This document shows, piece after piece, positions 9,323 to 57,100 of a stretch of DNA of 64,000 nt. The stretch spans positions 186,001 through 250,000 of the forward strand of contig NIVC01000420.1 in assembly GCA_002269645.1 (NCBI GenBank). Reading direction: 5' to 3'. The notes beneath the pieces are model-generated. The model was not told where the DNA came from and did no database searches. It saw only the letters and a program-made list of their open reading frames with translations. The stretch is from Macrostomum lignano (lineage: Eukaryota). The first letter of the stretch is position 1; every line of letters starts with the position of its first letter. A program made the position numbers and the translations under genes.

Positions 9323-9487
9323 AAGCTCGTATCCCACACTAACGATCCCATTAATGCTCAAATTTCCAAAGTGCTCAAATCTCAGTCCCAATGTGAAACC
9401 CCAATTAAATAAATCCGCTTAAGTCCGTTGAAAATCGCAGGTGGGCGCTAGCGCAGTGAACAATGAATTCCCCGAACAGAAACTACT

Positions 9488-16743: not shown

Positions 16744-18172
16744 ATGCGCGAGATCGTTCACATGCAAGCCGGCCAGTGCGGCAATCAAATCGGAGCCAAG
16801 GTGAGTCGTCCTGATAATCTTTCTGACTATCGACTACTGGCGGTTTAAACTTAGTATTTTCTTATCTTAATTAATACGCATTTTTGCATTGCAGTTCTGG
16901 GAGGTGATCTCAGATGAGCACGGTATCGACCCCACCGGCACCTACCATGGAGACTCGGACCTGCAGCTGGAGCGAATCTCTGTCTACTACAACGAGGCAA
17001 CTGGCGGAAAATACGTGCCGAGGGCTGTCCTCATCGACCTTGAGCCCGGCACCATGGAGAGTGTCCGGTCCACTGCTTTCGGCATGCTGTTCCAGCCCGA
17101 CAACCTCGTGTTCGGCAAGAGCGGCGCCGGCAACAACTGGGCCAAGGGCTACTACACGGAGGGCGCCGAGATCATTGAGAAGATCATGGACGTTGTTCGC
17201 AAGGAGTGCGAAGGTTGCGAATGCCTGCAGGGCTTCCAGATAACCCACTCGCTCGGGGGCGGCACCGGTTCCGGCCTGGGATCCCTCTTGCTCAGCAAAA
17301 TTCGCGAGGAGTACCCCGACCGCATCATGAGTTCCTACTCTATCGTACCCTCACCCAAAGTGTCCGACACTGTTGTGGAGCCCTACAACTGCATGCTGTC
17401 TTTGCATCAGCTAGTCGAGAACACTGACGCTAGCTTCTGCATCGACAACGAGGCCCTGTACTACATCTGCTTTCACACCCTGAAGCTCGGCCAGCCGACT
17501 TACAGCGACCTGAACCATCTAGTCAGCGCTGCCATGTCCGGCACAACCACCTGCCTGCGATTCCCTGGTCAACTCAACGCTGATCTGCGCAAGCTGGCCG
17601 TCAACATGGTGCCGTTCCCGCGGCTGCACTTCTTCATGCCCGGCTTCGCCCCGCTGACCGCTCGCGGCAGCTCCAGCTACAAGCAGGTGAACGTCGCCGA
17701 GCTCACCCAGCAGATGTTCGACGCCAAAAACATGATGGCCGCCTGCGACCCCAAGCACGGCCGCTACCTCACCGTTGCTGCCATCTTCCGCGGCCGCATG
17801 TCAACCAAGGAGGTCGACGAGCAGATGCTCAACCTTCAGAACAAGAACAGCTCCTACTTTGTCGAGTGGATTCCGAACAACGTCAAGACCGCCGTGTGCG
17901 ACATCCCGCCTAGGGGTATGAAAATGTCGGTGACCTTCATCGGCAACTCCACATCAATCCAGGAGCTGTTCAAGCGAGTCTCGGAGCAGTTCAGCGCCAT
18001 GTTCAAGCGGAAGGCCTTCTTGCATTGGTACACGAACGAGGGCATGGACGACCACGAGTTCATGGAGTCCGAGTCCAATGTCAACGATCTGGTCTCCGAG
18101 CTGCAACAGTACCAAGACGCCACCGCCGACGATGAGGGCGAGTACGAGGAAGAGGAAGAGGAGCTCGAGTAA
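16744..18172 (+). CDS. TUBB: Beta-tubulin, divergent isotype, 2 exons, 444 aa
   Basis: Exon 1 16744-16800 encodes [19 protein letters not shown]; intron 16801-16894 (GTGAGT...TGCAG); exon 2 16895-18172. Contains GGGTGSG, PRLHFF and VEWIPNN motifs and an acidic C-terminal tail. Confidence 0.98.
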
Positions 18173-23962: not shown

Positions 23963-26900
23963 ATGGTGTACAACGAACTGACGCGTCACTTCGGCTCGCT
24001 CAGCCTTGAAACAGCGTACCACCACCAGCAACAGCAGCAGCAGCAGCAGCACCACCAACAGCAGCAACTGCAACAACTGCAGCAACTTCATCTCGGCTCC
24101 ATCGGCAGCATCATGGACCCCGGCCAGGGCTACAGCCTGCACCAGCCGGCGCCCAGCGGACCCGAGAGTCCCAGCACGGCCTCGTCCGAGATCAAATCGC
24201 AGAAAAATCAGAACGCCATCGTTGTACCGCCCGAGGAAGCAATTTTGAAGCTGTGCGAGCGCACCAAATATCAGATTGTGCAGGAGAACGGCCAACGAAG
24301 GTACGGGCCGCCGCCGGACTGGGAGGACACGCCGCCCAACCGCGGCTGCGAGGTGTTTATCGGTAAGATACCCCGCGACTGCTTCGAAGACGAACTGGTG
24401 CCAGTGTTTGAGAAGGCCGGGCGCATCTACATGTTCCGCCTGATGATGGACTTCTCTGGATCCAACCGGGGCTACGGGTTCTGCATCTACACGAATCGGG
24501 AGGACACGAAGCGAGCCGTTCAGAAGCTCGACAACTATGAGATCCGTCGAGGCAAGACGCTAGGCGTCTGTCTCAGCGTTGACAACTGCAGGCTGTTTGT
24601 CGGCGGCATACCGAAGACCAAGACCAAGCACGAGATCCTTGTCGAGATGAAAAAAGTCACCGACGGAGTGCGTGACGTCATCGTGTATCCATCGGCGGCT
24701 GACAAGGGCAAAAATCGCGGCTTTGCATTCGTCGAGTACGAGCACCACAAGGCGGCCGCCATGGCCCGCCGGAAGCTGATCCCGGGTCGCATCCAGCTGT
24801 GGGGCCACCAGATCGCCGTGGACTGGGCCGAGCCGGAGCGCGAAGTCGACGAGGACATCATGTCCAAGGTGAACGGTTTAAGAATCTGCCTCTCCGCTCT
24901 CCATCAGTGCTTGAGAATCTGCCTCTCCGCTCTCCCTCAGTGCCTGAGAATCTGCCTCTCCCTCAGTGCTTGAGAATCTGCCTCTCCGCTCTCCCTCAGT
25001 GCTTGAGAATCTGCCTCTCCGCTCTCCCTCAGTGCTTGAGAATCTGCCTCTCCGCTCTCCCTCAGTGCCTGAGAATCTGCCTCTCCGTTCTCCCTCAGTG
25101 CTTGAGAATCTGCCTCTCCGCTCTCCCTCAGTGCTTGAGAATCTGCCTCTCCGCTCTCCCTCAGTGCTTGAGAATCTGCCTCTCCGCTCTCCCTCAGTGC
25201 CTGAGAATCTGCCTCTCCCTCAGTGCTTGAGAATCTGCCTCTCCGCTCTCCCTCAGTGCTTGAGAATCTGCCTCTCCCTCAGTGCTTGAGAATCTGCCTC
25301 TCCGCTCTCCCTCAGTGCTTGAGAATCTGCCTCTCCGCTCTCCCTCAGTGCTTGAGAATCTGCCTCTCCGCTCTCCCTCAGTGCTTGAGAATCTGCCTCT
25401 CCTCTCTTCATGACTGCTTGAGAATCTGCCTCTCCTCTCTTCATGACTGCTTGAGAATCTGCCTCTCTTCGCTCTCTTTCAGTGCCTGAAAGTCTGCCTC
25501 TTCGCTCTCCCTCAGTGCTTGAGAATCTGCCTCTCCGCTCTCCCTCAGTGCTTGAGAATCTGCCTCTCCTCTCTTCATGACTGCTTGAGAATCTGCCTCT
25601 CTCCGCTCTCTTTCAGTGCCTGAAAGTCTGCCTCTTCGCTCTCCCTCAGTGCTTGAGAATCTGCCTCTCCGCTCTCCCTCAGTGCTTGAGAATCTGCCTC
25701 TCCTCTCTTCATGACTGCTTGAGAATCTGCCTCTCTCCGCTCTCTTTCAGTGCCTGAAAGTCTGCCTCTTCGCTCTCCCTCAGTGCTTGAGAATCTGCCT
25801 CTCCGCTCTCCCTCAGTGCTTGAGAATCTGCCTCTCCTCTCTTCATGACTGCTTGAGAATCTGCCTCTCCTCTCTTCATGACTGCTTGAGAATCTGCCTC
25901 TCTCCGCTCTCTTTCAGTGCCTGAAAGTCTGCCTCTTCGCTCTCCCTCAGTGCCTGAGAATCTGCCTCTCCGCTCTCCCTCAGTGCTTGAGAATCTGCCT
26001 CTTCGCTCTCCCTCAGTGCTTGAGAATCTGCCTCTCCGCTCTCCCTCAGTGCTTGAGAATCTGCCTCTCCTCTCTTCATGACTGCTTGAGAATCTGCCTC
26101 TCCTCTCTTCATGACTGCTTGAGAATCTGCCTCTCTCCGCTCTCTTTCAGTGCCTGAAAGTCTGCCTCTTCGCTCTCCCTCAGTGCCTGAGAATCTGCCT
26201 CTCCGCTCTCCCTCAGTGCTTGAGAATCTGCCTCTTCGCTCTCCCTCAGTGCTTGAGAATCTGCCTCTCCGCTCTCCCTCAGTGCTTGAGAATCTGCCTC
26301 TCCTCTCTTCATGACTGCTTGAGAATCTGCCTCTCCTCTCTTCATGACTGCTTGAGAATCTGCCTCTCCTCTCTTCATGACTGCTTGAGAATCTGCCTCT
26401 CCTCTCTTCATGACTGCTTGAGAATCTGCCTCTCTCCGCTCTCTTTCAGTGCCTGAAAGTCTGCCTCTCCGCTCTCCCACAGTGCTTGAGAATCTGCCTC
26501 TCCGCTCTCCCTCAGTGCTTGAGAATCTGCCTCTCCTCTCTTCATGACTGCTTGAGAATCTGCCTCTCCTCTCTTCATGACTGCTTGAGAATCTGCCTCT
26601 CTCCGCTCTCTTTCAGTGCCTGAAAGTCTGCCTCTTCGCTCTCCCTCAGTGCTTGAGAATCTGCCTCTTCGCTCTCCCTCAGTGCTTGAGAATCTGCCTC
26701 TTCGCTCTCCCTCAGTGCTTGAGAATCTGCCTCTCCGCTCTCCCTCAGTGCTTGAGAATCTGCCTCTCCGCTCTCCCTCAGTGCTTGAGAATCTGCCTCT
26801 CCGCTCTCCCTCAGTGCTTGAGAATCTGCCTCTCCGCTCTCCCTCAGTGCCTGAGAATCTGCCTCTCCGCTCTCCCTCAGTGCTTGAGAATCTGCCTCTC

Positions 26901-40047: not shown

Positions 40048-40999
40048 TCCCGAAAAATAACGGACCATTATACGAGCTTTTTTGGCGTAAGTGGAGTTTA
40101 CTTACTCAAAAAACTGCACACAGAGAAAAGCCATAGACAAAATGGGGCATTGAGTTTTGGATAATCTGGTTGTGATAGTCGATAAAGCAAATCTAATATA
40201 TTCTCACTCAGAAACTCAAAAGATTATCCTGTGTAAAAAATCGATTCATTTAAATTGAGGCTGTCACATTGGACGATGGCAATGGACGATATAATGAGAT
40301 TAATCTGTCAAAAAGTCAATTAATTGATAAGACAATTAGGTCAGATTAGCACAGTCATTAGCTTATCAGTAGAGACAATAAAATAAGAAGTGTACAGAAC
40401 ACATCACTGATTTTAAAAAAGCAATATATCAATCTAAATAAAGTGAGAACAGAAGCATACATTCGAGGGTATGTACAGAGTAAAAAGGTAAAAAAGTTGA
40501 AAGTAATAATTAAAAAACAGACAATATACCAAATAAAATATCCATCACTCAGTAAGAATCATTCTATCGGATCAATATAAAATCAATAAAAACGGATTAT
40601 TCATGGAAAATGGTTTTGTTAATCATTTATGATTTGAGCAGCGCAGATAGATCTGGATATAAAGGTCGCTTCATTAATGTCTATTGTTTAGGTTATAATA
40701 TCGCTTTTTTGGCAGCAGTAGGTTTAGTCTGGCCCATAGACATAAAGCTCCAAAAATGTCTTGAAAACTGAGTGAGAGAGAGAGAGTCAAGTGACAGAGG
40801 TCCTTCTTTGTGCCGAGGTCTATGCCCGAACTATCAACTTGGTTGCCTTTTTCCTTTGTCTATGGGCAAGACCGATTCTACATGTACTTCTGCCAAGTGT
40901 GGCCAATAGCACAGGGTTCGGCGAATCCGGCCTTCGGGTCCTTTGAAATTTCACAATAGCAATCCGGACCGCTCAATATTCATGTTTCTTTTCAGCTGT

Positions 41000-41525
41000 T
41001 TCTTCTCTCTCCCTTCTCCTCTCTTGTTTCCTCTCTCCTCCCCTCTCTCCTTATCCCATCTCTTCTCCCCCCTCTCCTCTTACCTCTCCTCACTTCCCCT
41101 TCCCCTCTTCTCTCCCCCTTCCCCTCTTCTCCCCCCTTCCCCTCTTCTCTCCCCTTCCCCTCTTCTCTCCCCTTCCCCTCTTCTCTTCCCCTTCCCCTCT
41201 TCTCTCCCCTTCCCCTCTTCTCTTCCCCTTCCCCTCTTCTCTCCCCTTCCCCTCTTCTCCCCCTTCCCCTCTTCTCTCCCCTTCCCCTCTTCTCTCCCCT
41301 TCCCCTCTTCTCTTCCCCTTCCCTCTTCTCTCCCCCTTCCCCTCTTCTCCCCCTTCCCCTCTTCTCTCCCCCTTCCCCTCTTCTCTTCCCCTTCCCCTCT
41401 TCTCTCCCCCTTCCCCTCTTCTCTCCCCTTCCCCTCTTCTCTCCCCTTCCCCTCTTCTCTCCCCCTTCCCCTCTTCTCTCCCCTTCCCCTCTTCTCTCCC
41501 CCTTCCCTCTCTCCTCTCCCTCTTC
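41000..41525. repeat. CT-rich repeat (CCCCTTCCCCTCTTCTCT)n
   Basis: Visible directly. Confidence 0.9.
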
Positions 41526-41791
41526 TCTAAACTTATCTTCTGCCTTATCTTTCATCCCATCTCTCGTCTCTCCTCCCGAGAGCTCGTAATCCCTCTCCTT
41601 TTGTTTTCTTTCTATAAAGCTGATTTCTTTAAATCTGGCCCTCGGGGTAAATTGTAAGTTTGCCGAACCCTATTTTAGCATCTTACTGCAATATCTGCGC
41701 GCATAGACAATAGCAATTAAAAATCACAATGCAGCTGTCTTATGTTAATCTGGTTAATCTAAAAATTGATAAAATCTAGAAAACAATCTGA

Positions 41792-42391
41792 TCAAAGCGG
41801 CAGCTGCCAGAATCCGCAACAGGCGATGCTGTAAGCGGTGAGGTCTGGGAACAGCGCCGTGGATCTGTTAGGATTGTCCGGCGCCATCTGTTGCAATTGG
41901 CGCCAATAGCGCCAGAGCGCCAATCGAGACAGGCGCGTCAGACTGGCTGGCTGATTGAGTCCAGCCTCCCATTCTGCATCAAATAATAATTTAGCGCAGC
42001 GGCGGCCAGCCGGCGCCAGGCTGCTAGTTGGCGCCGCGGCGCCAGGCGCCAGGTGTGTCGGATTGGCGCCGAATTCCAACAGGACGCGCGCAACTTCGGC
42101 GTGATCGCGCCTGAGCGCAATGTGCAGCGCCGTGCAGCCCAGATGGCCGGCATCGACGTTGGCACCGCTACGGAGCAGCGCCGCGGCGGCTTCAGGCCGG
42201 TTGTACAGCGCCGCCAAGTGCAGCGGCGTCATGCGCTGGGCGTTGCGACTGCCGGGCCATTGGCCGGCCGCCAGCAGCCGGCACACTTCGTCCGGACGGT
42301 TCGCCTTCACCGCCAAGTGCAGCGGTGTATCGGAACGAAACGACGCCGGCGCCGGCGGTGCGAGCGGCGGCGATGCCGGAGCCTGCGGCGC
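41792..42391 (-). CDS. Ankyrin-repeat/SOCS-box (ASB-like) coding exon with no start codon of its own
   Basis: Acceptor AACTTTCAG|GCG at 42391, phase 0, open for 199 codons. Ankyrin motifs DTPLHLAV, MTPLHLAA and CTALHIAL..LLEFGANP; BC-box-like PASLTRLSRLALW. Confidence 0.75.
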   Translation of the reverse strand, partial: APQAPASPPLAPPAPASFRSDTPLHLAVKANRPDEVCRLLAAGQWPGSRNAQRMTPLHLAALYNRPEAAAALLRSGANVDAGHLGCTALHIALRRDHAEVARVLLEFGANPTHLAPGAAAPTSSLAPAGRRCAKLLFDAEWEAGLNQPASLTRLSRLALWRYWRQLQQMAPDNPNRSTALFPDLTAYSIACCGFWQLPL

Positions 42392-42469
42392 CTGAAAGTT
42401 TGAGTTCGATTGGAAAGTCCTCGAAGGTCCTTGTTATCCTTCAGGACACCCGCTGTCGCTTCAGGGTTA

Positions 42470-42670
42470 GAGTCGCTAATCCTTCAGGCAGCCCGATTCC
42501 GCTTCAGGGGAGGAGTGGCTAATCCTTCAGGCAGCCCGCTTCCGCTTCAGGGGAAGAGTGGCTAATCCTTCAGGCAACCCGCTTCCGCTTCAGGGGAAGA
42601 GTGGCTAATCCTTCAGGCCAGCCAGATTCCGCTTCAGGGTTAGAGTCGCTAATCCTTCAGACAGCCCGCT
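42470..42670. repeat. About 41-bp tandem repeat (AATCCTTCAGGCAGCCCGCTTCCGCTTCAGGGGAAGAGTGGCT-like)
   Basis: About 5 units visible. Confidence 0.8.
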
Positions 42671-43029
42671 CCTAACCTCTTAACTTTCGGTCTTTCAGGC
42701 AAGATGCAAATAAAAGTACTTTTGAGTACACATGCCAATCACAGAAAAAGCAAAAATATGAATGAAATCTTTTATTTGAAGAGCCAGTGTTCTAAATATG
42801 TTACTTGAAGTAGTTTAATGTAATAATGCCAATAACGATTGTAAAAATGCTCGAAATTCTATAGAACTATATCGAGGCTATACTGATGCTTAATGACACA
42901 AAACAATGTTTCAAAATATGTAAAATAATGAAAATGACTATGAAACAGTTTACAGATGTCATATACTCGTATAAGCGAAAAAGGCAAAAATTCTTTAATG
43001 CCCTAAAAAGAAATCGAGAAATCGAGTTT

Positions 43030-45440
43030 GAAATCCTTCAAGACTCCAAGGAATCTAACAGGATTCCGATAATCCCTACAGGATTCCGTTAATCCCTACA
43101 GGATTCTGTAAATCCCTTCAGAATTCCGATAATCCCTACAGGATTCCGATAATCCCTACAGGATTCCGATAATCTCTACAGGATGTATATAATCTTTGTC
43201 TGTTCTTTTGGCTCCCATGGCAGAGAAAGGCCGAGGACGCTGTTCTCAGGCCGAGGCGAAGCCGAGTTCTCAGTTCTGACTGAGACTGAGAGCCTGAGCC
43301 TGAAGGATTAGCCTTAGAATTGCGTCCTCGGCCTTTCTCTGCCACAGGAACCAAAAGAACAGACGAAGATCGTACTTAATCTACAGATTTTGGAAGCGAC
43401 TGGGAGTGGGAGAGAGGTATTCGTCAAAAGCGGGGGTGTGGGGGCGCAGCCCCCCACATTTAACCATAGACAAAAATTAAAGTAAAAGATTCAATGCTTA
43501 AATTAAAAGCGAGAAAGGAAAGGTTTGGGCAGCTAGAGGAAATAAGAGAGAACTGAGAATCATTGAACACGACTTGGAACTCGCTTTCGACTGGTTGAAT
43601 GACATTGAATTGAGAGAAAACGAGGCTTCTATATTTGCTTTACTGTCCGATAACGAGGTTGCTGAAAGGATTGACGACTATTTGACGACTGGTTTCAGGA
43701 GAGGCAAACCAAACTGCTTCATGGAGACGCCTGCGGTCTATCTGTGTCTACCTATCGGCCGGCATACTCTCGACTCCAATTGTGGCGAATATCACCAAAC
43801 CCGTGTCTACGGATGGTAAATTCTCAAACCAGTCTCCAAGGAAGACTTGTGCCAGCAGGTTGCATCGGGCTGGACTGGCTAGGGACGATACAGCCCGCGT
43901 CACTGGACATTCGTCCAACGCAATAGAGAGGTACATACGGCTAGACGTCCAGGACCATTCGCGTATGACCTACGCTCTACACGCCGGAGGAGCCGTGGAG
44001 TCCAATGGGCGGACCAATGAGCAAGATGTCGTGTCTGAGTACTACCAAGAAGATGCGCATGACTGTCCACGGTGACACCAACAGCGTAGAAATCATGTTC
44101 GAGTAAATCGGCAAGAATGAATCGGTCTTTACTGCTGTTGATAGTTTATACTTCTAATGGACTAACTGACAAATTATAGTCGTTCTAAAATATTCTCAGG
44201 CCTTGTTCTTAGGCCTGTTAACCGGTTAACAGGACTCGTTTTGAGTTCTCAGGCTTAGTTTTTTAGTGAGGTTTGGCCATAGACTATCGTTCCACTAGAA
44301 AAGAAGGAGCCTAGGAATTTAGTGTGAACCGTCATATCTGTAGGTTAATCCGATAATCTCTACAGGATTCCGATAATCCCTACAGGATTCCGATAATCCC
44401 TACAGGATTCCGATAATCTCTACAGGATTCCGATAATCCCTACAGGATTCCGATAATCCCCTTCAGGATTCCAATTATCCCTACAGGATTCCGATAATCC
44501 CTACAGGATTCCGATAATCCCTACAGGATTCCAATTATTCCAACAGAATTCCGATAATCCCTACAGGATTCTGATAATCCCTACAGGATTCCGATAATCC
44601 CCTTCAGGATTCCAATAATCCCTACAGGATTCCGATAATCCCTACAGGATTCCGATAATCCCCTTCAGGATTCCGATAATCCCCTACAGGATTCCGATAA
44701 TCCCTACAGGATTCCGATAATCCCTACAGGATTCCGATAATCCCCTTCAGGATTCCAATAATCCCTACAGGATTCCGATAATCCCTACAGGATTTCGATA
44801 ATCCCTACAGGATTCCGATAATCCCTACAGGATTCCGATAATCCCTACAGGATTCCGATAATCCCTACAGGATTCCGATAATCCCCTTCAGGATTCCGAT
44901 AATCCCCTTCAGGATTCCGATAATCCCCTTCAGGATTCCAATAATCCCTACAGGATTCCGATAATCCCTACAGGATTCCGATAATCCCTACAGGATTTCG
45001 ATAATCCCTACAGGATTCCGATAATCCCTACAGGATTCCGATAATCCCCTTCAGGATTCCGATAACCCCTACAGGATTCCGATAATCCCCTTCAAGATTC
45101 CGATAACCCCTACAGGATTCCGATAATCCCTACAGGATTCCGATAATCCCCTTCAGGATTCCGATAATCCCTTCATGTTTCCGATAATCCCTACAAGATT
45201 CTGTTAATCCGTTCAGGATTCCGATAATCCCTACAGGATTCCGATAATCCCTACAGGATTCCGATAATCCCCTTCGGGATTCCGATAATCCCTTCATGTT
45301 TCTGATAATCCCTACAATATTCTGTTAATCTCTTCAGGATTCAGATAATCCTTTTCAGGATTCCGATAATCCCTACAGGATTCCAATTATTCCAACAGAA
45401 TTCCGATTATACGTACAGGATTCCGACAATCCCTACAGGA
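43030..45440. repeat. 20-bp minisatellite ATAATCCCTACAGGATTCCG, interrupted at about 43190-44345 by an insertion
   Basis: The same unit occurs at 43030-43185 and 44348-45440. Confidence 0.9.
43574..44075 (+). pseudogene. Degenerate Crypton-type (DUF3504-like) tyrosine recombinase fragment
   Basis: Two overlapping frames give ..VYLCLPIGRHTL / IVANITKPVSTDGKFSNQSPRKTCASRLHRAGL..VTGHSSNAIERY. This resembles the family pattern WY..P(I/V)G.NTL..FTNHSLR.T.AT.L..AG..TGH.S..Y. It carries a frameshift and an H-to-Q change. Confidence 0.65.
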
Positions 45441-45563
45441 TTGTCCATGGGTTCGAATCCGTGCAGGCGGATAAATTTGGGGCTCGAGGAGCGTGTAACT
45501 ACTCATACGAGTATCCAATAGATTTCGTATCTCTAAATGAATCGATTCAACAAGGCCGACTGG

Positions 45564-48438
45564 TCAGGCTGGCAGCTGGGCGGCGGGCAGTCGGCAGCAG
45601 ACGTAGTTCAGCAAGCACGCTGGCAGACTCCGCAGCAGGGCTTCGCACAGCTCCGGCCCGCTGCCGCCGCGCCTCAAATTTTGCCACCGAAGCCACAGCG
45701 CCCGCATCGACAGACGTCGAAGACTCGGCGCCAATCTGGCGGCCTCCTCGGCGGCAGCGAGCAGCTCGGCGGCCTCCGAGCCGGGTGCCGCCATCTGCCG
45801 GGGCCGCCGGCCGTCGCTGGCCGCTAGGCGGGGGTCGGCGCCGAAGGCTAGCAGGACGCGAATGACGGACGGTCGGGCCTGCCTAGCGGCCACGTGCAGC
45901 GGAGTGGTGTGCCGGCAGGGCGAGTCCAGGCGGGCACCGGAGCGGGCCAGCACCAGCGCGGCTGCGGGCCGGCCGTGCCAGGCTGCGTAGTGCAGCGGCG
46001 CGCCCAGGTGACCATCGAATTTGTCAGGAGCGGCGCCGCGGTCCAGGAGCAGCTGGGAATGATGAGGAGGCGGAGCGGTGATACTGAGTAGTCACCATTC
46101 ACCCAACATCATTCACCAATCGCTCACTCATCATCCAATATTCACTCAAGATTCACCATTCACCGACTCTAATCTACTATTCACCCACCCAACTTCACCA
46201 CTCTAATTCACTATTCACCCACCCAACTTCACCATTCTAATTCACTATTCACACACTCAGCTTCAATATTCACACACTCAGCTTCACCACTCTAATTCAC
46301 TATTCACCCACCCAACTTCACCACTCTAATCTACTATTCACCCACCCAACTTCACCACTCTAATTCACTATTCACCCACCCAACTTCACCATTCTAATTC
46401 ACTATTCACACACTCAGCTTCAATATTCACACACTCAGCTTCACCACTCTAATTCACTATTCACCCACCCAACTTCACCACTCTAATTCACTATTCACCC
46501 ACCCAACTTCACCATTCTAATTCACTATTCACACACTCAGCTTCACCATTCACACACTCAACTTCACCACTCTAATTCACTATTCACCAACTCAACTTCA
46601 CCATTCACAGACTCTAATTTACTATTCACCCACCCAACTTCACCACTCTAATCTACTATTCACCCACCCAACTTCACCACTCTAATTCACTATTCACCCA
46701 CCCAACTTCACCACTCTAATCTACTATTCACCCACCCAACTTCACCACTCTAATTCACTATTCACCCACCCAACTTCACCACTCTAATTCACTATTCACA
46801 CACTCAGCTTCACCATTCACACACTCTAATTCACTATTCACCAAATCAACTTCACCATTCACCGACTCTAATCTACTATTCACCCACCCAACTTCACCAC
46901 TCTAATTCACTATTCACACACCCAACTTCACCATTCACCCACACTAATTCACCATTCACCCACTCAATTTCACCATTTACCCAGTCGAATTCAACCTTCA
47001 CACACTAATTCACCATTCACCCACATATTATTCACCATTCACCCACCATCATTCACCATTCACCCACCATCATTCACCATTCACCCATCATCATTCACCA
47101 TTCACCCACCATTCACCCACCATCATTCACCATTCACCTAACTTCACCACTCTAATTCACTATTCACCAACTCAACTTCACCATTCACCGACTCTAATCC
47201 ACTATTCACCCACCCAACTTCATCACTCTAATATACTATCCACCCATCCAACTTCACCACTCTAATTCACTATTCACACACTCAACTTCACCATTCTAAT
47301 TCACCATTCACACACTCTAATTCACTATTCACCAACTCAACTTCACCATTCACCGACTCTAGTCTACTATTCACCCACCCAACTGCACCACTCTAATTCA
47401 CTATTCACACACTATTCACACACTCAGCTTCACCATTCACACACTTATCTACTATTCACACACCCAACTTCACCACTCTAATCTACTATTCACCCACCCA
47501 ACTTCACCACTCTAATTCACTATTCACACACTCAACTTCACCATTCACCCTCTCTAATTCACTATTCACACACCCAACTTCACCATTCACCCACACTAAT
47601 TCACCATTCACCCACTCAATTTCACCATTTACCCAGTCGAATTCAACCTTGACACACTAATTCACCATTCACCCACATATTATTCACCATTCACCCACCA
47701 TCATTCACCATTCACCCACCATCATTCACCATTCACCCACCATCATTCACCATTCACCCACCATCATTCACCATTCACCCACCATCATTCACCATTCACC
47801 CACCATCATTCACCATTCACCCACCATCATTCACCATTCACCCACCATCATTCACCATTCACCCACCATCATTCACCATTCACCCACCATCATTCACCAT
47901 TCACCCACCATCGTTCACCATTCACCCACCATCGTTCACCATTCACCCACCATCGTTCACCATTCACCCACCATCGTTCACCATTCACCCACCATCGTTC
48001 ACCATTCACCCACCATCGTTCACCATTCACCCACCCGCTCACCTGCAGAGCGGCGGCATGCCCAGCGGCGGCGGCCTCATGCGCCGGGCCAGTCAGGGCG
48101 AATCGCGGTGAAATCCAGGCGCCCCGATCGAGCAGCAGGCGGACCAACGCCGAGCATCCGCTGGCAGCGGCATCGCACAGCGGTGTCGCGCCGTCGATGT
48201 TCTCCCGGTTGACGCCGGCCCCGTTGGCCAGCAGGTAGCGAGCGGCCTCAAGGTTGCCGGCCTGGCAGGCCAGGTGCAGCGCCGTGTTGCCGTCGGCGTC
48301 GCAATCGTCGATGTGCCGGTCGCCATCGATGAGCGGCAGCAGCCGGGAGCGGTCGGCTGCGTCGGTGGCCATCGCGTGGTCAAGCAGGACTCCGGCGGTG
48401 GACTCCCGGCCGTAGAGGGCCGGCACGCAGCCAGACAT
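45564..48438 (-). CDS. Ankyrin repeat and SOCS box protein, ASB13-like (ASB5/9/11/13 group), 2 exons, 294 aa
   Basis: Exons 48043-48438 and 45564-46052, phase 0, GTGAGC...CCCAG. NIDGATPLCDAAASG (compare ASB13 NIDGSTPLCDACASG), GAPLHYAA, TTPLHVAA. SOCS box APSLRRLSMRAL...LPACLLNYV. Confidence 0.85.
46090..48036. repeat. Composite TTCACC-rich minisatellite filling the ASB13-like intron
   Basis: Units such as TTCACCACTCTAATTCACTATTCACCCACCCAAC and 21-bp CACCATTCACCCACCATCATT. Confidence 0.92.
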
Positions 48439-48499
48439 TGAGGACTCCGACTGGGACGAGGCTGACTATTGACTACTGCTGAAGCTATGATAAGAGGCT

Positions 48500-51164: not shown

Positions 51165-54100
51165 TCAGAGCAGCCTAACCCTACAGCTGGGTGTTGAGCA
51201 ATAGCAGATGAGCTCTTTGCCTGGCACACTGCCAACCTCGTAGCTATAGTCCCAGCACAGCTCCTCGCCAGCCGAGATTCTTCTAAGAGCAAAGAAAGCC
51301 GTCTCAGGAAATCTGGGATCGTGAGTTTTAACGAATACGCTCTGCACTCGACAATTGGGCTCGCAGGAATGGTTCATGTAGCGGCCGAGATTGCCGCGCT
51401 GCTTGGCGTCCATGACGTACGGGTGCGACTCGCCGAACCAGCTGGTGCGAAGGTCCACCGGGCCCGAGGCGGAGCTGGAGTTGAAGCGAACCTGGGAAAA
51501 AGAGAGGGAAGTTGGGGTTAGACTATCTACTTCTCACTCTCGGTAGATAAGGTGAGATCTAGATTGCAGTCTGTCCACTGTCCACTCCTCACTCTCGGTA
51601 GATAAGGTGAGATCTAGGTTGCAGTCTATCCACTGTCCACTGCTCACTCTCGGTAGATAAGGTGAGATCTAGATTGCAGTCTATCCACTGTCCACTCCTC
51701 ACTCTCGGTAGATAAGGTGAGATCTACTTTAGATTGCAGTCTGTCCACTTCTCACTCTCGGTAGATAAGGTGAGATCAAGATTGCAGTCTGTCCACTTCT
51801 CACTCTCGGTAGATAAGGTGAGATCAAGATTGCAGTCTGTCCACTTCTCACTCTCGGTAGATAGGTGAGATCTAGATTGCAGTCTGTCCACTTCTCACTC
51901 TCGGTAGATAAGGTGAGATCTAGATTGCAGTCTGTCCACTTCTCACTCTCGGTAGATAAGGTGAGATCTAGATTGCAGTCTGTCCACTTCTCACTCTCGG
52001 TAGATAAGGTGAGATCTAGATTGCAGTCTGTTCACTTCTCACTCTCGGTAGATAAGGTGAGATCTAGATTGCAGTCTATCCACTGTCCACTTCTCACTCT
52101 CGGTAGATAAGGTGAGATCTAGGTTGCAGTCTATCTACTATCTACTTCTCACTCTCGGTAGATAAGGTGAGATCTAGATTGCAGTCTGTCCACTGTCAAC
52201 TTCTTACTCTCGGTAGATAAGGTGAGATCTAGGTTGCAGTCTATCTACTATCTACTTCTCACTCTCTGTAGATAAGGTGAGATCTAGATTGCAGTCTGTC
52301 CACTGTCCACTTCTTACTCTCGGTAGATAAGGTGAGATCTAGGTTGCAGTCTATCCACTGTCCACTCCTCACTCTCGGTAGATAGGTGAGATCTACTTTA
52401 GATTGCAGTCTGTCTACTTTTCTTATAGGATAGATATACTATCCTACTGCCAGTAGCAAGCAGGCACAAGACATCGCACCCACCCGATCCTCCGGTTCTC
52501 GGGCGAATCGCTCGAAGCCCTCCTTCTCCATCTGCATGATCTCGATGAGGTCCAGCTCGGCCTGGTATTCGTCCCCCAGTTCGGTGCCGTAGCGCACGGC
52601 CGTCTCCTCGTTGTAGACTTCGCCAGCGTAAATGCAAATGAAAGCGCCTTTGGGAATGTCGTGCAGAGTGCGGATGCCCCAGCCTTTGCGGGCGGTGCGA
52701 AATACCTGAGGCGAAATAAATTCATATTGTTTGCAAACAATACTTATTATTATAAAGCATGAATAAGATCGGAACGTTTCTAGGTAATGAATCAAAGAAA
52801 CCTCGGATAGCAACGGGGAATTGATCTCGAGTAGCATAGCAACTGGACAATAAAGCTCAGGTAGCATAGCAACGGGACAATAAAGCTCAGGTAGCATAGC
52901 AACGGGACAATAAAGCTCAGGTAGCATAGCAACGGGACAATAAAGCTCAGGTAGCATAGCAACGGGACAATAAAGCTCAGGTAGCATAGCAACGGGACAA
53001 TAAAGCTCAGGTAGCATAGCAACGGGACAATAAAGCTCAGGTAGCATAGCAACGGGACAATAAAGCTCAGGTAGCATAGCAACGGGACAATAAAGCTCAG
53101 GTAGAATAGCAACGGGACAATAAAGCTCAGGTAGCATAGCAACGGGACAATAAAGCTTAGGTAGCATAGCAACGGGGAAATCTGTTTTCATAGCTCGAAG
53201 AAATCTCAGTCTCCATAGAAACGGGGAATGTCTCCATAGCAACGGAAAAATCTGTCGCCATAGCAACGGGGAAATCTTATTCTCCATAGAAATGCGGAAA
53301 TCACTGCCAGCATAGCAGCAGGAAAATCTCAGTCTCCATAGCGACAAGAAAATCTCATTCTCCACAGCAACAGGGAAATCTCGGTCTCCATAGCAACGGG
53401 GGAAGTCATTCCGCATAGCAACAGGGAAATCTAAGTCTCCACAGCAACAGGGAAATCTCAGTCTCCATAGCAACGGGGGAAGTCATTCCGCATAGCAACA
53501 GGGAAATCTAAGTCTCCATAGCAACAGGGAAATCTGTCTCCATAGCAACGGGGGAAGTCAGTCCGCATAGCAATGGGGAATCTTTGTTTCCATAGCAACG
53601 GTAAAAAGCCAGCATAGCAACGGGGCAAAAGTCAGTCAAGAAGAACAAACCCAAACAGCAACTCACCTGCAGCCGATTGCGCAATCCGTGCTGCACAACC
53701 CGATTGCGGCAGGTGGCCGCCCGGCACCGGCACTTGGCATTGCACTCGTAGATGCCGCCAAGCGCCCTGGCCATGTGCCGGCCGTGACGATAAGTGACTC
53801 GAATATCAGCTTTGCCAGTGATCGCCTGCGACGATCGAATAGTGAGCTGCTGACAGGCGCAACGACGCCTATCCGAGCAGTCGTCTGTGCAGTCGCAGCA
53901 GACCAGGAAGCCCGGCTCGGATTCGTTAGTGTTAACGCCCTGAGTAGGGACTCGCTCGGCCGCGTATTCAATGTAGGGCAGGCTGGTGTTGTCCAGGCTG
54001 TTCACCGCGCTGACTGGCACGAACTCTTTGCCGTAGCTGATGTCCTTCAGCTGGTAGATTATCTGCGAATTTAAAGGTGGGGCGACTAATTAGGTACCGA

Positions 54101-57100
54101 GGATACTGTCAATTAATGGAGGGCCCTATAAGTAGCTACTTTATTGGCCCTATAAATAGCTAATTAATTGGTCCTATAAATAGCTACTTAAAAATTGGCC
54201 GTATAAATAGCTACTTTATTGGCCCTATAAATAGCTAATCAATTGGCCCTATAAATAGCTAATCAATTGGCCCTATAAATAGCTAATCAATTGGCCCTAT
54301 AAATAGCTAATCAATTGGCCCTATAAACAGCTACTAAATTGACCCTATAAACAGCTACTTTATTGCCCTATAAACAGCTACTTAATTGGCCCCATAAACA
54401 GCTGCTTAATTGGCCCTATAAATAGCCGCATAATTGGCACTAAGTGGGCCTTCAGAAGGAACCACAATAGAGTCAACCAACCTTGAGCGGCTGGAATTCG
54501 TTGTTAATCCGAACGGCGGCATCGAAGCAAAAGGCGGACACGTGCAGCCGGCAGCAGGTCTCTCTCAGGTAGGCGTCCAAATCGGCGTGGCTGCGCAAGC
54601 TTCGGCCGCAGGGGGCCCGGTACTCCACCACTTCGCGGCCGCGCCCGGCCGGCCCTCCGACGCCGCCGCCGCCGCCGCCGCCGCCAACTCCGCCGTCGTC
54701 ATCGGCGGCCAGCACCAGCAGTCGCCACCAGCCAAGCGCTACGGGCGCCTCCAACGGATTCCGACCCCTAGCAGCGGCGTCATCGAAGGCAACAGCGCTG
54801 GACAGGCCGCCGGCAGGGTCCGGGCAGCAGCTGGGCGAGCAGCGATGCGGCCGGTACAGCCTCGGCTGCGGGCACGGCGACTCGGGATCGAATGTGGCCA
54901 CCTGACGGCCTCTGTAGGCCGCGTCCTGGGCTACGCTGTCGTCGTCGGAGTCGCCGTTGTCACGTCGACGGCGACGCCGGCCAGTCGAACCGATGTACAC
55001 AAAATCGTCATCGTCCTCGGCAGCGTTGGCCGTCGATTTTGACGAGGCCAATCGACTAGCGGAAGTGGACTTCCTAGCGTGCCCGACTCGAGCCTGCGAG
55101 GCCACAACCGCTGCAGACACCTGCACTTGGACTGGCTTCTGCTTTGGCTGCTGCTGTTGCTGCTTTGGCGGCCCGTACAACCTGTCGTAGAGCGTCTTGA
55201 GCCGCGTGCTGCCGCGGTACACCTTCAAGTTAATGGATGAATGGGCAGCCCCTGGTGAGCTGTAGAGCTGCGTCAGAGAAGAGTAACAAAGGACAGTAAA
55301 GGTGATTTGAAGAGTGAAAAAATGACAGGAAGGGGAATTTGAGGAGTGACAAGATAGACAGGATCTGAGGAGTGACAAGATAGACAGGAAGGAGATCTGA
55401 GGAGTGACAAGATAGAGAGGATCTGAGGAGTGACAAGATAGACAGAAAGGAGATCTGAGGAGTGACAAGACCGACAGGAAGGTGATCTGAGGAGTGACAA
55501 GACCGACACGAAGGAGATCTGAGGAGTGACAAGATAGAGAGGATTTGAGGAGTGACAAGACCGACAGGAAGGAGATCTGAGGAGTGACAAGATAGAGAGG
55601 ATTTGAGGAGTGACAAGACCGACAGGAAGGAGATCTGAGGAGTGACAAGATAGAGAGGATTTGAGGAGTGACAAGACCGACAGGAAGGAGATCTGAGGAG
55701 TGACAAGACCGACAGGAAGGAGATCGGAGGAGTGACAAGACCGACAGGAAGGAGATCTGAGGAGTGACAAGACCGACAGGAAGGAGATCTGAGGAGTGAC
55801 AAGACCGACAGGAAGGTGATCCGAAGAGTGACAAGACGGAGCGGCAACTCACCCACTCGCACGAGCCGTCGTGCATGAATGTCAGCCGAATGAGGGCGCC
55901 GTCGACGGCTTCAACGCGAGCGTTGTGCCAGCCGCCGCGCAGCTCGGCGACAACGGCCTGCCCGGGCTGCAGACGGAGCAGATCCCGAGTGGGATAGGCG
56001 TCCAAGTAGTCGCGAATAAAAAAGCGACTCTCCGGCCCAGCCAGCCGCCAATTGTTGACGCTCTGAGCCAGGACTCGGTGCACCGCGGCCTGCTCAGAGT
56101 ACTGACAGTAGCCATCGTCGAAGAATATTAGATAACGAAATTTATTAGCCTCGCCGGGCGATTCGGCTACGATGCCGGCGTATCGAGGCGTCTCGTCGCC
56201 GTCGGCCTCGGCGTCGGGACCTTCGTCGGCGTAGTCGGGATCGGCGACGGTCGATACCACGCGAGTGCCGACCGGGCAGCGCTCCTGACGGGTTAGACAG
56301 GAGTCGCCGAGGGCCACCTGGACTGGTTGAACGGTGCGGCTGAGCTGCGGCTGAGGCTGCGTTGGCTGCTGGTTGGCGGCCAGCGTCGGGGCGCCGAGGA
56401 ATCGAACAACGTAGGCGTCGCGCGGCAGCTCGTGGGTAACGACGGCGCGGCACCATTCGTCTTGGTCGCGCAGGGCGAACACTGATTCGCCGACGTGAAC
56501 TTTGCTGCGGAAAATAGGCGGATTGCGGTAGTTGCTATGGGGAATGGCGACAGTTGCTATGGGGAGTTGTGACAGTTGTTATGGGGTGGTGACAGTTGTT
56601 ATGGGGAATGGTGACAGTTGCTATGGAGAGTGGTGACAGTTGCTATGGAGAGTGGTGACAGTTGCTATGGAGAGTGGTGACAGTTGCTATGGGAAATGGC
56701 GACAGTTGCTATGGGGAATGGCGACAGTTCCTATGGGGAATGGTGATAGTTGCTATGGAGAATGGTGACAGTTGCTATGGGGAATTGTGACAGTTGCTAT
56801 GGGGAGTTGTGACAGTTGCTATGGGAGTTGTGACAGTTGCTATGGGAGTTGTGACAGTTGCTATGGGGAATGGCGACAGTTGCTATGGAGAATGGCGACA
56901 GTTGCTATATAACGACTTACTAAGGTTTCTCCAACAGATCCGTAGTAATAAGATTTTTGAGATTTTCCGCGGTCAGCAGTTTAACCGGCGCCGTTAGCAC
57001 CACTCGCCGTCCGACACCAGCAGCTCCGCCAGATGCAACCGTCGACGAAGCTGCCTCGCCGTTGTCCAATCGGCGAACTTTACTCGCCGGCGGGATGGAC

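What the first reader, a model, noticed from the sequence alone, without database searches (positions are those of the whole stretch)
41792..42391. ATG-less ankyrin-SOCS exon: start codon supplied by the spliced leader, or an alternative terminal exon
Seen: a 600-nt coding exon begins exactly in phase 0 after a good acceptor (AACTTTCAG|GCG CCG). An in-frame TAA lies about 15 codons upstream with no ATG in between, and the first internal Met would cut off an ankyrin repeat. Known: flatworm spliced leaders end in a conserved AUG that can serve as initiator Met. Inference 1: trans-splicing creates M-APQAPASPP..., so the gene has no genomic start codon. Inference 2: ASB13-like exon 1 (donor at 48043, also phase 0) splices either to 46052 or to 42391, giving two cullin-adaptor isoforms with swapped ankyrin and SOCS modules. 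Either would be an unusual architecture.
Basis: partly seen in the sequence, partly recalled or inferred. Interest (0 to 1): 0.7.

Follow-up and report, generated by a model that had tools for sequence, protein, structure and literature searches.

The report
Start-codon-less ankyrin gene, spliced-leader initiated
This is a small single-exon ankyrin gene of the flatworm Macrostomum lignano that has no start codon of its own and most likely gets one from the trans-spliced leader RNA, a mechanism already known in flatworms, so it is a clean example and not a new architecture.

Summary
Window 42391..41792 (minus strand) is a 199-codon open exon plus TGA. It begins right after TTTCAG, has an in-frame TAA 15 codons upstream, and has no ATG in between. 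The window is Macrostomum lignano (scaffold NIVC01000420.1).

The species' 35-nt spliced leader (SL) ends in ATG, and its published acceptor motif is [T/C]TNCAG. The evidence-based GenBank annotation calls the exon a separate, 5'-partial gene downstream of the ASB13-like gene BOX15_Mlig012796g2. The same is true in all three genomic copies. In two copies the CDS starts exactly after an AG, both in frame.

The ORF is intact in all three copies (6 synonymous : 3 non-synonymous changes). No conserved ATG-containing upstream exon exists. On the SL-spliced mRNA the SL AUG is the first AUG, and the next AUG is out of frame.

Reading 1 (the SL supplies the Met) is therefore well supported, but only indirectly, because no reads could be inspected. 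Reading 2 (exon 1 to this exon) has no support. Older gene models do join the exon to internal sites of ASB exon 2.

The "SOCS box" is degenerate and not significant by Pfam. SL-AUG initiation has been known since 2006, so interest is modest.

The parts
41792..42391 (-). Single coding exon of the ATG-less gene ('X'): 199 codons plus TGA (41794..41792). With the SL Met the product is 200 aa, starting MAPQAPASPP...
   Evidence: GenBank calls a CDS here (198 aa). Identical or near-identical CDSs are called in two other genomic copies.
42392..42397 (-). TTTCAG, the predicted SL trans-splice acceptor. It matches the published M. lignano SL-acceptor motif [T/C]TNCAG.
   Evidence: Sequence and motif from PMC8629364. 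The acceptor and the 45 nt upstream are identical in all three loci. The L002 CDS starts exactly here.
42383..42385 (-). Second in-frame CAG acceptor, 9 nt downstream. The exon would then start at 42382 and give MAPASPP...
   Evidence: The annotated partial CDS of the L003 copy (PAA72601.1, 196 aa) starts right after this CAG.
42434..42436 (-). In-frame TAA, 15 codons upstream of the exon. It closes the frame in the unspliced RNA.
42047..42337 (-). Three ankyrin repeats (residues about 19-115). Repeat 1 lies upstream of the first genomic in-frame ATG.
   Evidence: Pfam Ank E=5.6e-20 and Ank_2 24-112. AlphaFold2 pLDDT is 94-98 over residues 20-115. Fold matches are generic ankyrin proteins.
42230..42232 (-). 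First in-frame genomic ATG (exon codon 54), the rival start site.
42258..42260 (-). Out-of-frame ATG in a strong context (ccaATGg). It opens a 22-codon ORF and sits between the SL AUG and the internal in-frame ATG.
41795..41956 (-). Degenerate SOCS-box-like C-terminus: a BC-box-like SLTRLSRLAL, then a tail homologous to the C-terminus of the neighbouring ASB gene.
   Evidence: 42% identity to the ASB C-terminus. Colinear with the BC box of an ASB13-like protein. Pfam SOCS_box shows no hit. hhalign gives E=0.54. The tail has low pLDDT.
42771..42776 (-). The only canonical AATAAA between the ASB stop codon and the acceptor. It is a candidate poly(A) signal of the upstream gene.
   Evidence: Conserved in all three loci. 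It lies 385 nt upstream of the acceptor, and 235 of those nt are tandem repeat.
42436..42670 (.). 43-nt minisatellite filling most of the putative intercistronic/outron region.
   Evidence: Copy number differs between loci.
48043..48438 (-). Exon 1 of the upstream ASB13-like gene BOX15_Mlig012796g2.
   Evidence: 100% match to PAA83413.1.
45564..46052 (-). Exon 2 (terminal) of the ASB13-like gene. It contains the weak internal donor TAC|GTCTGC (last exon base 45603) used by the old fused model P0246.

Best explanation
The exon is a complete small gene of Macrostomum lignano. It encodes a 'half-ASB' protein: a Pro/Ala-rich N-terminus, three ankyrin repeats and a degenerate SOCS-like tail. It is a diverged, intron-less paralogue of the C-terminal half of the ASB13-like gene immediately upstream.

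The likely mechanism has four steps:
1. The gene is transcribed on the same strand and in the same transcriptional unit as the ASB13-like gene, in an operon-like arrangement.
2. The mature mRNA is made by trans-splicing the 35-nt spliced leader (...TTGCATG) onto the acceptor TTTCAG|GCG at 42391. The in-frame CAG| acceptor 9 nt downstream is used alternatively.
3. The 3'-terminal AUG of the leader becomes the first AUG of the mRNA. It is in frame and starts a 200-aa protein (MAPQAPASPP...).
4. The genome therefore holds no start codon for this gene.

Shown here:
- the sequence anatomy;
- the species and its SL;
- the separate 5'-partial annotation in three copies;
- frame compatibility;
- an intact ORF with a synonymous excess;
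- the absence of a conserved upstream ATG exon.

Inferred:
- that the annotated 5' ends are SL sites;
- that ribosomes start at the SL AUG;
- that the protein acts as a (possibly Cullin-linked) ankyrin adaptor.
For: **Species and its SL**
- The neighbouring gene is 100% identical to M. lignano PAA83413.1.
- The locus lies on GCA_002269645.1 NIVC01000420.1.
- The SL is CGGTCTCTTACTGCGAAGACTCAATTTATTGCATG.
- The acceptor motif is [T/C]TNCAG.
- 30% of genes are SL-spliced and 15% sit in operons.
- The repeat-adjusted spacing threshold for an operon is <1 kb (PMC8629364).

**How the annotation was built**
- Transcriptional units are cut into genes only at experimentally mapped SL-read peaks and poly(A) sites. 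ORFs are then called with TransDecoder (PMC5730564).
- That annotation gives a separate gene at this exon in three loci. In the L003 copy it shares the unit prefix with ASB: Mlig015685g1 is ASB and g2 is X.
- The CDS starts exactly at TTTCAG| in L002, exactly after the next CAG| in L003 (flagged 'partial'), and 3 nt inside the exon in L001.
- If the transcript extended upstream, the TAA would have forced an ORF starting at the internal ATG. That is not what is annotated.

**Frame and competing AUGs**
- SL+exon gives a 200-codon ORF from the SL AUG.
- The alternative acceptor is also in frame.
- The next AUG is out of frame in a strong context.

**Constraint**
- The ORF is intact in all three copies.
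- There are 9 unique substitutions, 6 synonymous and 3 non-synonymous. My own binomial estimate against neutrality is about 0.015.
- All 3 changes upstream of the internal ATG are synonymous.
- Ankyrin repeat 1 lies upstream of the internal ATG and is modelled at pLDDT >95.

**No cis start exon**
- No ATG-containing phase-0 candidate exon between the ASB stop and the acceptor has a GTRAG donor.
- None is shared by all three loci.

**Operon-like spacing**
- The stop-to-acceptor distance is 1786 nt in L003, of which 1264 nt are tandem repeats.
- A conserved AATAAA lies 342-560 nt upstream of the acceptor.

**Precedent**
- More than 40 S. mansoni cDNAs need the SL AUG (Cheng 2006, cited).
- The same holds in Echinococcus.
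- Macrostomum authors note that the SL's final ATG is a likely start codon.
Against: - No SL-containing read, cDNA or peptide for this gene could be inspected. Support for the SL site rests on how the published annotation was made and on where its CDSs start.
- The annotated start in the window's own copy is 3 nt inside the exon and not after an AG. I cannot explain this.
- The acceptor motif alone is not statistically significant.
- The sequence context of the SL AUG (T at -3) is not optimal.
- Older gene models join the same acceptor in cis to the upstream gene.
- Overall divergence between copies is as low in the flanks as in the CDS. Selection is therefore inferred only from a 6:3 ratio.
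- No orthologue outside M. lignano was found.
- No canonical poly(A) signal lies within 1 kb downstream of the stop.
Confidence: 0.7

Rival explanations
1. The exon is mainly an alternative 3'-terminal exon of the upstream ASB13-like gene. It would be reached by cis-splicing from the exon-1 donor (48043), from a weak internal donor in exon 2 (45603), or from a repeat-derived micro-exon. The result would be ASB isoforms with a swapped or added ankyrin-SOCS module.
For: - All the junctions are phase 0 to phase 0.
- UniProt models from the older ML2 assembly use the 42391 acceptor. P0246 (A0A1I8JHA1, 485 aa) reads ...LLNY|APQAP. P0122 (A0A1I8IF15, 386 aa) reads ...ARLDSP-RDYRNP|APQAP.
- The P0122 structure matches the L002 copy, where exon 2 is truncated and fused to the 20-mer repeat.
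- Both genes lie in one transcriptional unit.
- Flatworm acceptors are often shared between cis- and trans-splicing (PMC12582326).
Against: - No recorded protein has the exon 1 to X junction.
- That junction would cut ankyrin repeat 4 in mid-helix.
- The donors used by the fused models (GTCTGC, GTAGAG) do not fit the species' GT[G/A]AG consensus. They look like gene-predictor read-through.
- The newer annotation, built on SL and poly(A) evidence, splits the two genes in all three loci.
- X stays intact in L002, where the ASB copy is broken.
Confidence: 0.12
2. The mRNA, trans-spliced or not, is translated from the first genomic in-frame ATG (exon codon 54). The product would be a 146-aa protein with two ankyrin repeats, and the upstream open frame would be an untranslated relic.
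For: - The ATG at 42232..42230 sits just before the TPLH motif of repeat 2, so it does not cut a repeat in the middle.
- The SL AUG has a weak -3 base.
- In L003 the SL AUG would be out of frame for the neighbouring ASB gene, which shows the SL AUG is not always the start.
Against: - A well-formed ankyrin repeat lies upstream of this ATG.
- All 3 substitutions upstream of this ATG are synonymous.
- An out-of-frame AUG with a strong context lies between the SL AUG and this ATG.
- The frame is open exactly from the acceptor.
Confidence: 0.1
3. The exon is a non-functional, 5'-truncated duplicate (possibly a retrocopy) of an ASB-like gene. It would be carried passively in the 3' region of the ASB transcription unit, and its open frame and acceptor would be coincidental.
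For: - It lacks the intron that its paralogue has at the homologous position, and it lacks the first three repeats.
- Its SOCS box is not recognisable.
- No orthologues were found.
- The three copies are so similar that an intact ORF is weak evidence for function.
Against: - It is only 36% identical to its paralogue, so the duplication is old, yet 199 codons remain open.
- The substitution ratio is 6 synonymous: 3 non-synonymous.
- The ankyrin fold is predicted with confidence.
- It is annotated as an expressed gene in three loci.
Confidence: 0.08

Closest known systems
[quoted passage not shown]
   Same: - The SL ends in AUG.
- The acceptor lies directly in front of an open frame that has no AUG of its own.
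- The SL AUG is in frame.
- The N-terminal domain would be lost if the next AUG were used.
   Different: - This case is in a free-living macrostomorph. I found no gene-level study of SL-AUG use in that group in the searched library.
- Neither trans-splicing nor translation of this particular mRNA was seen directly here.
SL-resolved operons / multi-gene transcriptional units of M. lignano (Wudarski et al. 2017; Ustyantsev & Berezikov 2021)
   Same: - The two genes are neighbours on the same strand.
- In the L003 copy both carry one transcriptional-unit name in the annotation.
- The downstream gene starts at a [T/C]TNCAG acceptor.
- The spacer is inflated by repeats and falls below 1 kb once tandem repeats are removed.
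   Different: - The two genes of the unit are paralogues of each other.
- In the window's own copy the spacer also holds an insert of about 1.17 kb that I could not classify.
ASB13-like ankyrin repeat and SOCS box proteins (the neighbour BOX15_Mlig012796g2; mollusc P0130 with six ANK repeats plus Pfam SOCS_box)
   Same: - X is colinear with ANK repeats 4-6 and the BC-box start of ASB13-like proteins.
- X is 36% identical to the neighbour over 150 residues, and 42% identical in the tail.
   Different: - It has only three repeats.
- It has a Pro/Ala-rich leader in place of repeats 1-3.
- It has no intron.
- Its SOCS box is not detectable by Pfam or hhalign, and the BC-box Cys is replaced by Ser.

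Membership tests
SL-AUG-initiated trans-spliced flatworm genes | The organism's spliced leader ends in AUG | tested here: met
   The species was identified by a 100% protein match. The SL sequence ending in ATG comes from PMC8629364.
SL-AUG-initiated trans-spliced flatworm genes | SL is joined to the acceptor in front of the ORF (SL-containing reads or cDNA) | not testable with these tools
   Only indirect evidence is available. The annotation is cut at SL-read peaks. The CDS starts exactly after AG in two of three copies. TTTCAG fits the motif. No reads were accessible, and no Logan or other transcript-derived protein was found.
SL-AUG-initiated trans-spliced flatworm genes | [quoted passage not shown] | tested here: met
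   SL+exon gives a 200-codon ORF from the SL AUG. The alternative acceptor is also in frame.
SL-AUG-initiated trans-spliced flatworm genes | No genomic AUG can give the full conserved N-terminus | tested here: met
   - TAA lies 15 codons upstream with no ATG.
- The first ATG is at codon 54, after ankyrin repeat 1.
- No conserved upstream ATG exon exists.
SL-AUG-initiated trans-spliced flatworm genes | Translation actually starts at the SL AUG | not testable with these tools
   This needs ribosome profiling, N-terminal proteomics or a reporter.
ASB (ankyrin repeat and SOCS box) family | Ankyrin repeat domain | tested here: met
   Pfam Ank E=5.6e-20 with three repeats. The model is confident and matches ankyrin folds, including ASB11.
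ASB (ankyrin repeat and SOCS box) family | C-terminal SOCS box (PF07525: BC box plus Cul5 box) | tested here: inconclusive
   - Pfam gives no hit even at E<=10, for X or for the M. lignano ASB neighbour.
- hhalign against real SOCS boxes gives E=0.54, aligning only the P-x-S-L...R start.
- Positional homology to the BC box of P0130 is present.
- The tail has pLDDT <50.
ASB (ankyrin repeat and SOCS box) family | Binds Elongin B/C and Cullin-5 | not testable with these tools
   Biochemical assay required.
M. lignano operon (criteria of Ustyantsev & Berezikov 2021) | Adjacent genes on the same strand, with no opposite-strand gene between them | tested here: met
   Gene tables of L001-L003.
M. lignano operon (criteria of Ustyantsev & Berezikov 2021) | Repeat-adjusted intergenic distance below 1 kb | tested here: met
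   - L003: 1786 nt from stop to acceptor minus 1264 nt of tandem repeats leaves 522 nt.
- Window: 3172 minus 1456 leaves 1716 nt. This falls to about 550 only if the 1.17-kb insert absent from L003 is also counted as repeat.
- Distances were measured from the stop codon, not from the unknown poly(A) site, so they are upper bounds.
M. lignano operon (criteria of Ustyantsev & Berezikov 2021) | The downstream gene is SL trans-spliced | not testable with these tools
   Same indirect evidence as above.

The most novel reading that the evidence does not exclude
The 42391 acceptor may be used both ways. With the SL it would give a stand-alone, SL-AUG-initiated half-ASB. By cis-splicing from the upstream paralogue it would give fused or module-swapped ASB isoforms. 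In the genomic copy whose ASB gene has lost its own SOCS exon (L002), the downstream gene would then serve as the replacement terminal exon. That would be gene fusion or exon shuffling between operon neighbours caught in progress, enabled by an ATG-less phase-0 first exon.
Probability: 0.12. Interest if true: 0.55.

Novelty: new member of a known kind. Interest (0 to 1): 0.3.

Why it matters
If confirmed, this is a clean gene-level example in a transgenic model flatworm of a protein whose start codon is not in its gene but in the spliced leader.

- **For annotation:** M. lignano GenBank entries of this type are labelled 'partial' when they are probably complete. Older UniProt models fuse the exon to its neighbour.
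- **For transgene and knock-down design:** the true N-terminus and transcript boundaries differ from the models.
- **For evolution:** a phase-0 acceptor with no ATG makes a downstream operon gene easy to fuse to its upstream neighbour.

It does not reveal a new mechanism.

Tried and rejected
1. **Homology search with the exon.** It returned only generic ankyrin hits. The tool lists cluster [15 protein letters not shown] no longer than about 1.75x the query, which is why the fused models were missed. An exact look-up recovered them.
2. **Exact look-up of M+exon (200 aa).** It is not in the collection, so no transcript-derived SL-initiated ORF is on record. P0122 has no contig on record.
3. **HMMER of the C-terminal 95 aa against 1.84 billion [15 protein letters not shown].** The only hit was a spurious repeat translation, so no orthologues were found.
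4. **SOCS-box tests.** All were negative or non-specific: Pfam at E<=10, hhalign against real SOCS boxes, a PDB profile search and Foldseek.
5. **Search for the gene names in papers and supplements.** Nothing was found. Wasik et al. 2015 is not held, so I could not check how the ML2 models were made.
6. **SL sequence in the window.** It is absent. There is no SL RNA gene here and no genomic SL copy in front of the exon, which argues against a retrocopy of a trans-spliced mRNA.
7. **Upstream ATG-exon scan.** There were 33 chance candidates. None has a GTRAG donor and none is shared by all three loci. The candidate MDNP|GTAGGG (45448..45437) is shared only with L003.
8. **Rate-based selection test.** It was uninformative, because the flanks are as conserved as the CDS.
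9. **My recollection that the insert at 43574..44075(+) resembles a tyrosine recombinase.** Pfam did not support it.

Full report
**1. What is there**

The feature is on the minus strand. Window 42391..41792 is a 600-nt open stretch of 199 sense codons plus TGA. It begins directly after AACTTTCAG.

- The frame is closed 15 codons upstream by TAA (42436..42434), and no ATG lies between that stop and the exon.
- The first in-frame ATG is exon codon 54 (42232..42230).
- Pfam finds three ankyrin repeats (Ank E=5.6e-20; Ank_2 covers residues 24-112).
- The first repeat (residues about 19-50) lies upstream of that ATG.
- An AlphaFold2 model has mean pLDDT 79.8. Residues 20-115 score 94-98, including repeat 1. 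The first 18 Pro/Ala-rich residues and the last 23 residues are not confidently modelled.

The acceptor motif by itself is not rare: YTNCAG occurs 402 times in the window, about once per 320 nt per strand.

**2. Organism and neighbours**

Joining the two upstream exons (48438..48043 and 46052..45564) gives a 294-aa protein. It is 100% identical to Macrostomum lignano PAA83413.1, BOX15_Mlig012796g2.

- The window lies on GCA_002269645.1 scaffold NIVC01000420.1.
- The gene order on this strand is a SETDB1-like gene, then the ASB13-like gene, then the exon in question. A convergent gene follows.

**3. How the exon relates to its neighbour**

- Exon residues 43-192 align colinearly with ASB residues 138-285 at 36% identity.
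- The C-terminal tails are 42% identical to the very end, matching on ...CC...QLP.
- Residues 19-42 correspond to the last part of ASB exon 1. The exon therefore contains, uninterrupted, the ankyrin repeat that the ASB intron splits.
- Against a bona fide ASB13-like protein with a Pfam SOCS box (P0130), the exon is colinear with ankyrin repeats 4-6 and the start of the BC box: PKSLSHFCRLSI against PASLTRLSRLAL.

The exon is therefore an old, intron-less 'half-ASB' paralogue.

The SOCS label is weak:
- Pfam SOCS_box does not hit it, or its M. lignano neighbour, even at E<=10.
- hhalign against real SOCS boxes gives E=0.54.
- Foldseek returns only generic ankyrin proteins.

**4. What public gene models do with it**

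Exact look-ups and cluster listing show two generations of models.

The Mlig_3_7 GenBank annotation calls the exon a separate gene in three genomic copies:

| Locus | Product | CDS start |
|---|---|---|
| Window copy (L001) | 198 aa, PQAPAS... | 3 nt inside the exon |
| L002 (NIVC01001255.1) | 199 aa, APQAP... | Exactly at TTTCAG\| |
| L003 (NIVC01001075.1; PAA72601.1 BOX15_Mlig015685g2, 'partial') | 196 aa, APASPP... | Exactly after the next in-frame CAG\|, 9 nt downstream |

None of the three products starts with Met.

In L003 the ASB gene is g1 and the exon is g2 of the same unit name. According to the paper describing this annotation, transcriptional units were cut into genes by TBONE only at experimentally mapped SL-read peaks and poly(A) sites, and ORFs were then called with TransDecoder (PMC5730564). 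A CDS that begins at the first base after an AG and is flagged partial is what that pipeline produces for an SL-trimmed mRNA whose frame is open to its 5' end. Had the transcript extended upstream, the TAA would have forced an ORF starting at the internal ATG.

The older ML2-era UniProt models instead fuse the exon to the ASB gene through the same acceptor:
- P0246 (485 aa) reads ...LLNY|APQAP, using a weak internal donor TAC|GTCTGC at 45603.
- P0122 (386 aa) reads ...ARLDSP-RDYRNP|APQAP.

L002 explains P0122. In that copy ASB exon 2 is truncated after ...ARLDSP and fused to the 20-nt minisatellite, which reads RDYRNP before a GTAG. The exon-1 donor is also altered there.

No recorded model joins exon 1 (48043) directly to 42391.

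**5. The spliced leader**

M. lignano has one 35-nt SL, CGGTCTCTTACTGCGAAGACTCAATTTATTGCATG (PMC8629364).

- The top motif at SL acceptors is [T/C]TNCAG. TTTCAG fits it exactly.
- About 30% of genes are SL-spliced and about 15% are in operons.
- Intercistronic distances peak near 100 bp after repeats are subtracted, and 1 kb is used as the operon threshold.

Appending the SL to the exon gives a 200-codon ORF from the SL AUG (MAPQAPASPP...). The alternative acceptor gives MAPASPP..., also in frame. The next AUG on the mRNA is out of frame in a strong context (ccaATGg, 22 codons) and precedes the internal in-frame ATG. A scanning ribosome that skipped the SL AUG would therefore be diverted.

**6. 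Spacer**

- Only one AATAAA lies between the ASB stop and the acceptor (42776..42771). It is conserved in all three loci.
- It sits 385 nt upstream of the acceptor in the window. Of those, 235 nt are a 43-nt minisatellite.
- In L003 the stop-to-acceptor distance is 1786 nt, of which 1264 nt are tandem repeats.
- The window and L002 carry an extra insert of about 1.17 kb (43185..44348) that is absent from L003.

**7. Constraint**

- The exon ORF is intact in all three copies.
- The acceptor and the 45 nt before it are identical in all three.
- The copies differ at nine positions, 6 synonymous and 3 non-synonymous. By my own binomial estimate (assuming about 73% of random changes are non-synonymous), the chance of so few non-synonymous changes is about 0.015.
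- The three changes upstream of the internal ATG are all synonymous.
- Overall divergence is no lower in the CDS than in the 3' flank, so this is suggestive only.
- The exon is intact in L002, where the ASB copy is broken.

**8. Search for an ordinary start exon**

I enumerated every ATG-initiated open segment ending at a phase-0 GT between the ASB stop and the acceptor.

- This gave 33 chance candidates in the window.
- None has the species' GT[G/A]AG donor.
- None is shared by all three loci.

**9. Comparison with what is known**

- All reported flatworm SLs end in AUG.
- Cheng et al. 2006 showed that the SL AUG can initiate translation and that more than 40 S. mansoni cDNAs require it (as cited).
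- The same is inferred for Echinococcus.
- Macrostomum genome authors note that the SL's final ATG is a likely start codon.
- Flatworm acceptors are often shared between cis- and trans-splicing.

The mechanism is therefore established. What is specific here is the gene, the species, and the fact that the two operon neighbours are paralogues.

**10. Verdict**

- **Observation:** confirmed.
- **Reading 1 (the SL supplies the Met):** best explanation, confidence about 0.7. It rests on indirect but convergent evidence.
- **Reading 2 (exon 1 to this exon):** not supported. Cis-joining to exon 2 appears only in older models with poor donors. It may be predictor read-through or a minor isoform.
- **Limits:** no reads, cDNAs or peptides were accessible, and no orthologue was found.
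- **Unexplained:** the 3-nt offset of the annotated start in the window's own copy.
- **Classification:** novelty is 'new member of a known kind'; interest is modest.

Noticed in passing
L002:5930-5961 and L002:7896-8060: In the second genomic copy the ASB13-like gene is broken. The exon-1 donor region is rearranged, so the annotated product is 135 aa ending ...AAALRSAR*. Exon 2 is truncated after ...ARLDSP and fused to the 20-nt minisatellite. The downstream ATG-less gene remains intact.
   Followed up: yes
window 48439-48470 (minus); L003:6530-6575: Models of the ASB gene also begin right after AG dinucleotides (aatAG| and cccAG|), which look like SL sites. In the window copy the SL AUG would be in frame and would add MSASSQSESS or MSESS before the native ATG. 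In L003 a 2-nt insertion puts the SL AUG out of frame, where it would open a long overlapping ORF. SL-AUG use is therefore not uniform even at this locus.
   Followed up: partly
window 43185-44348: An insert of about 1.17 kb lies between the two genes. It is present in the window and L002 but absent from L003. It carries plus-strand ORFs (43574-43819, 43782-44075) with no Pfam hit. From memory it resembled a tyrosine-recombinase (Crypton-like) remnant, but this was not confirmed.
   Followed up: partly
window 46143-48035 and throughout: The ASB intron is made almost entirely of 21/34/42-nt minisatellites. Tandem Repeats Finder lists 71 rows scoring at least 200 in 64 kb (some rows describe the same array at different periods). 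These arrays fill introns and spacers and create many long spurious ORFs in the mechanical ORF list.
   Followed up: no
UniProt A0A1I8JHA1 (P0246) and A0A1I8IF15 (P0122): Older M. lignano gene models fuse the ASB gene and the downstream gene through non-consensus donors. They also begin with untranslated-region residues (SESSM...). They are probably mis-merged operon neighbours.
   Followed up: partly
window 40792-41791 (minus): No canonical or common variant poly(A) signal lies within 1 kb downstream of the stop codon of the ATG-less gene. The 3' end of its mRNA is undefined, and a purine-rich minisatellite (41095-41525) lies there.
   Followed up: no
window 9448-12304(-), 16889-18172(+), 23963-24973(+), 52439-56482(-): Other genes in the window are an arrestin (Arrestin_C), a beta-tubulin-type tubulin, an RRM protein and a SETDB1-like Pre-SET/SET protein. 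The SETDB1-like gene is on the same strand directly upstream of the ASB gene and may belong to the same transcriptional unit, since the ASB gene is numbered g2.
   Followed up: partly
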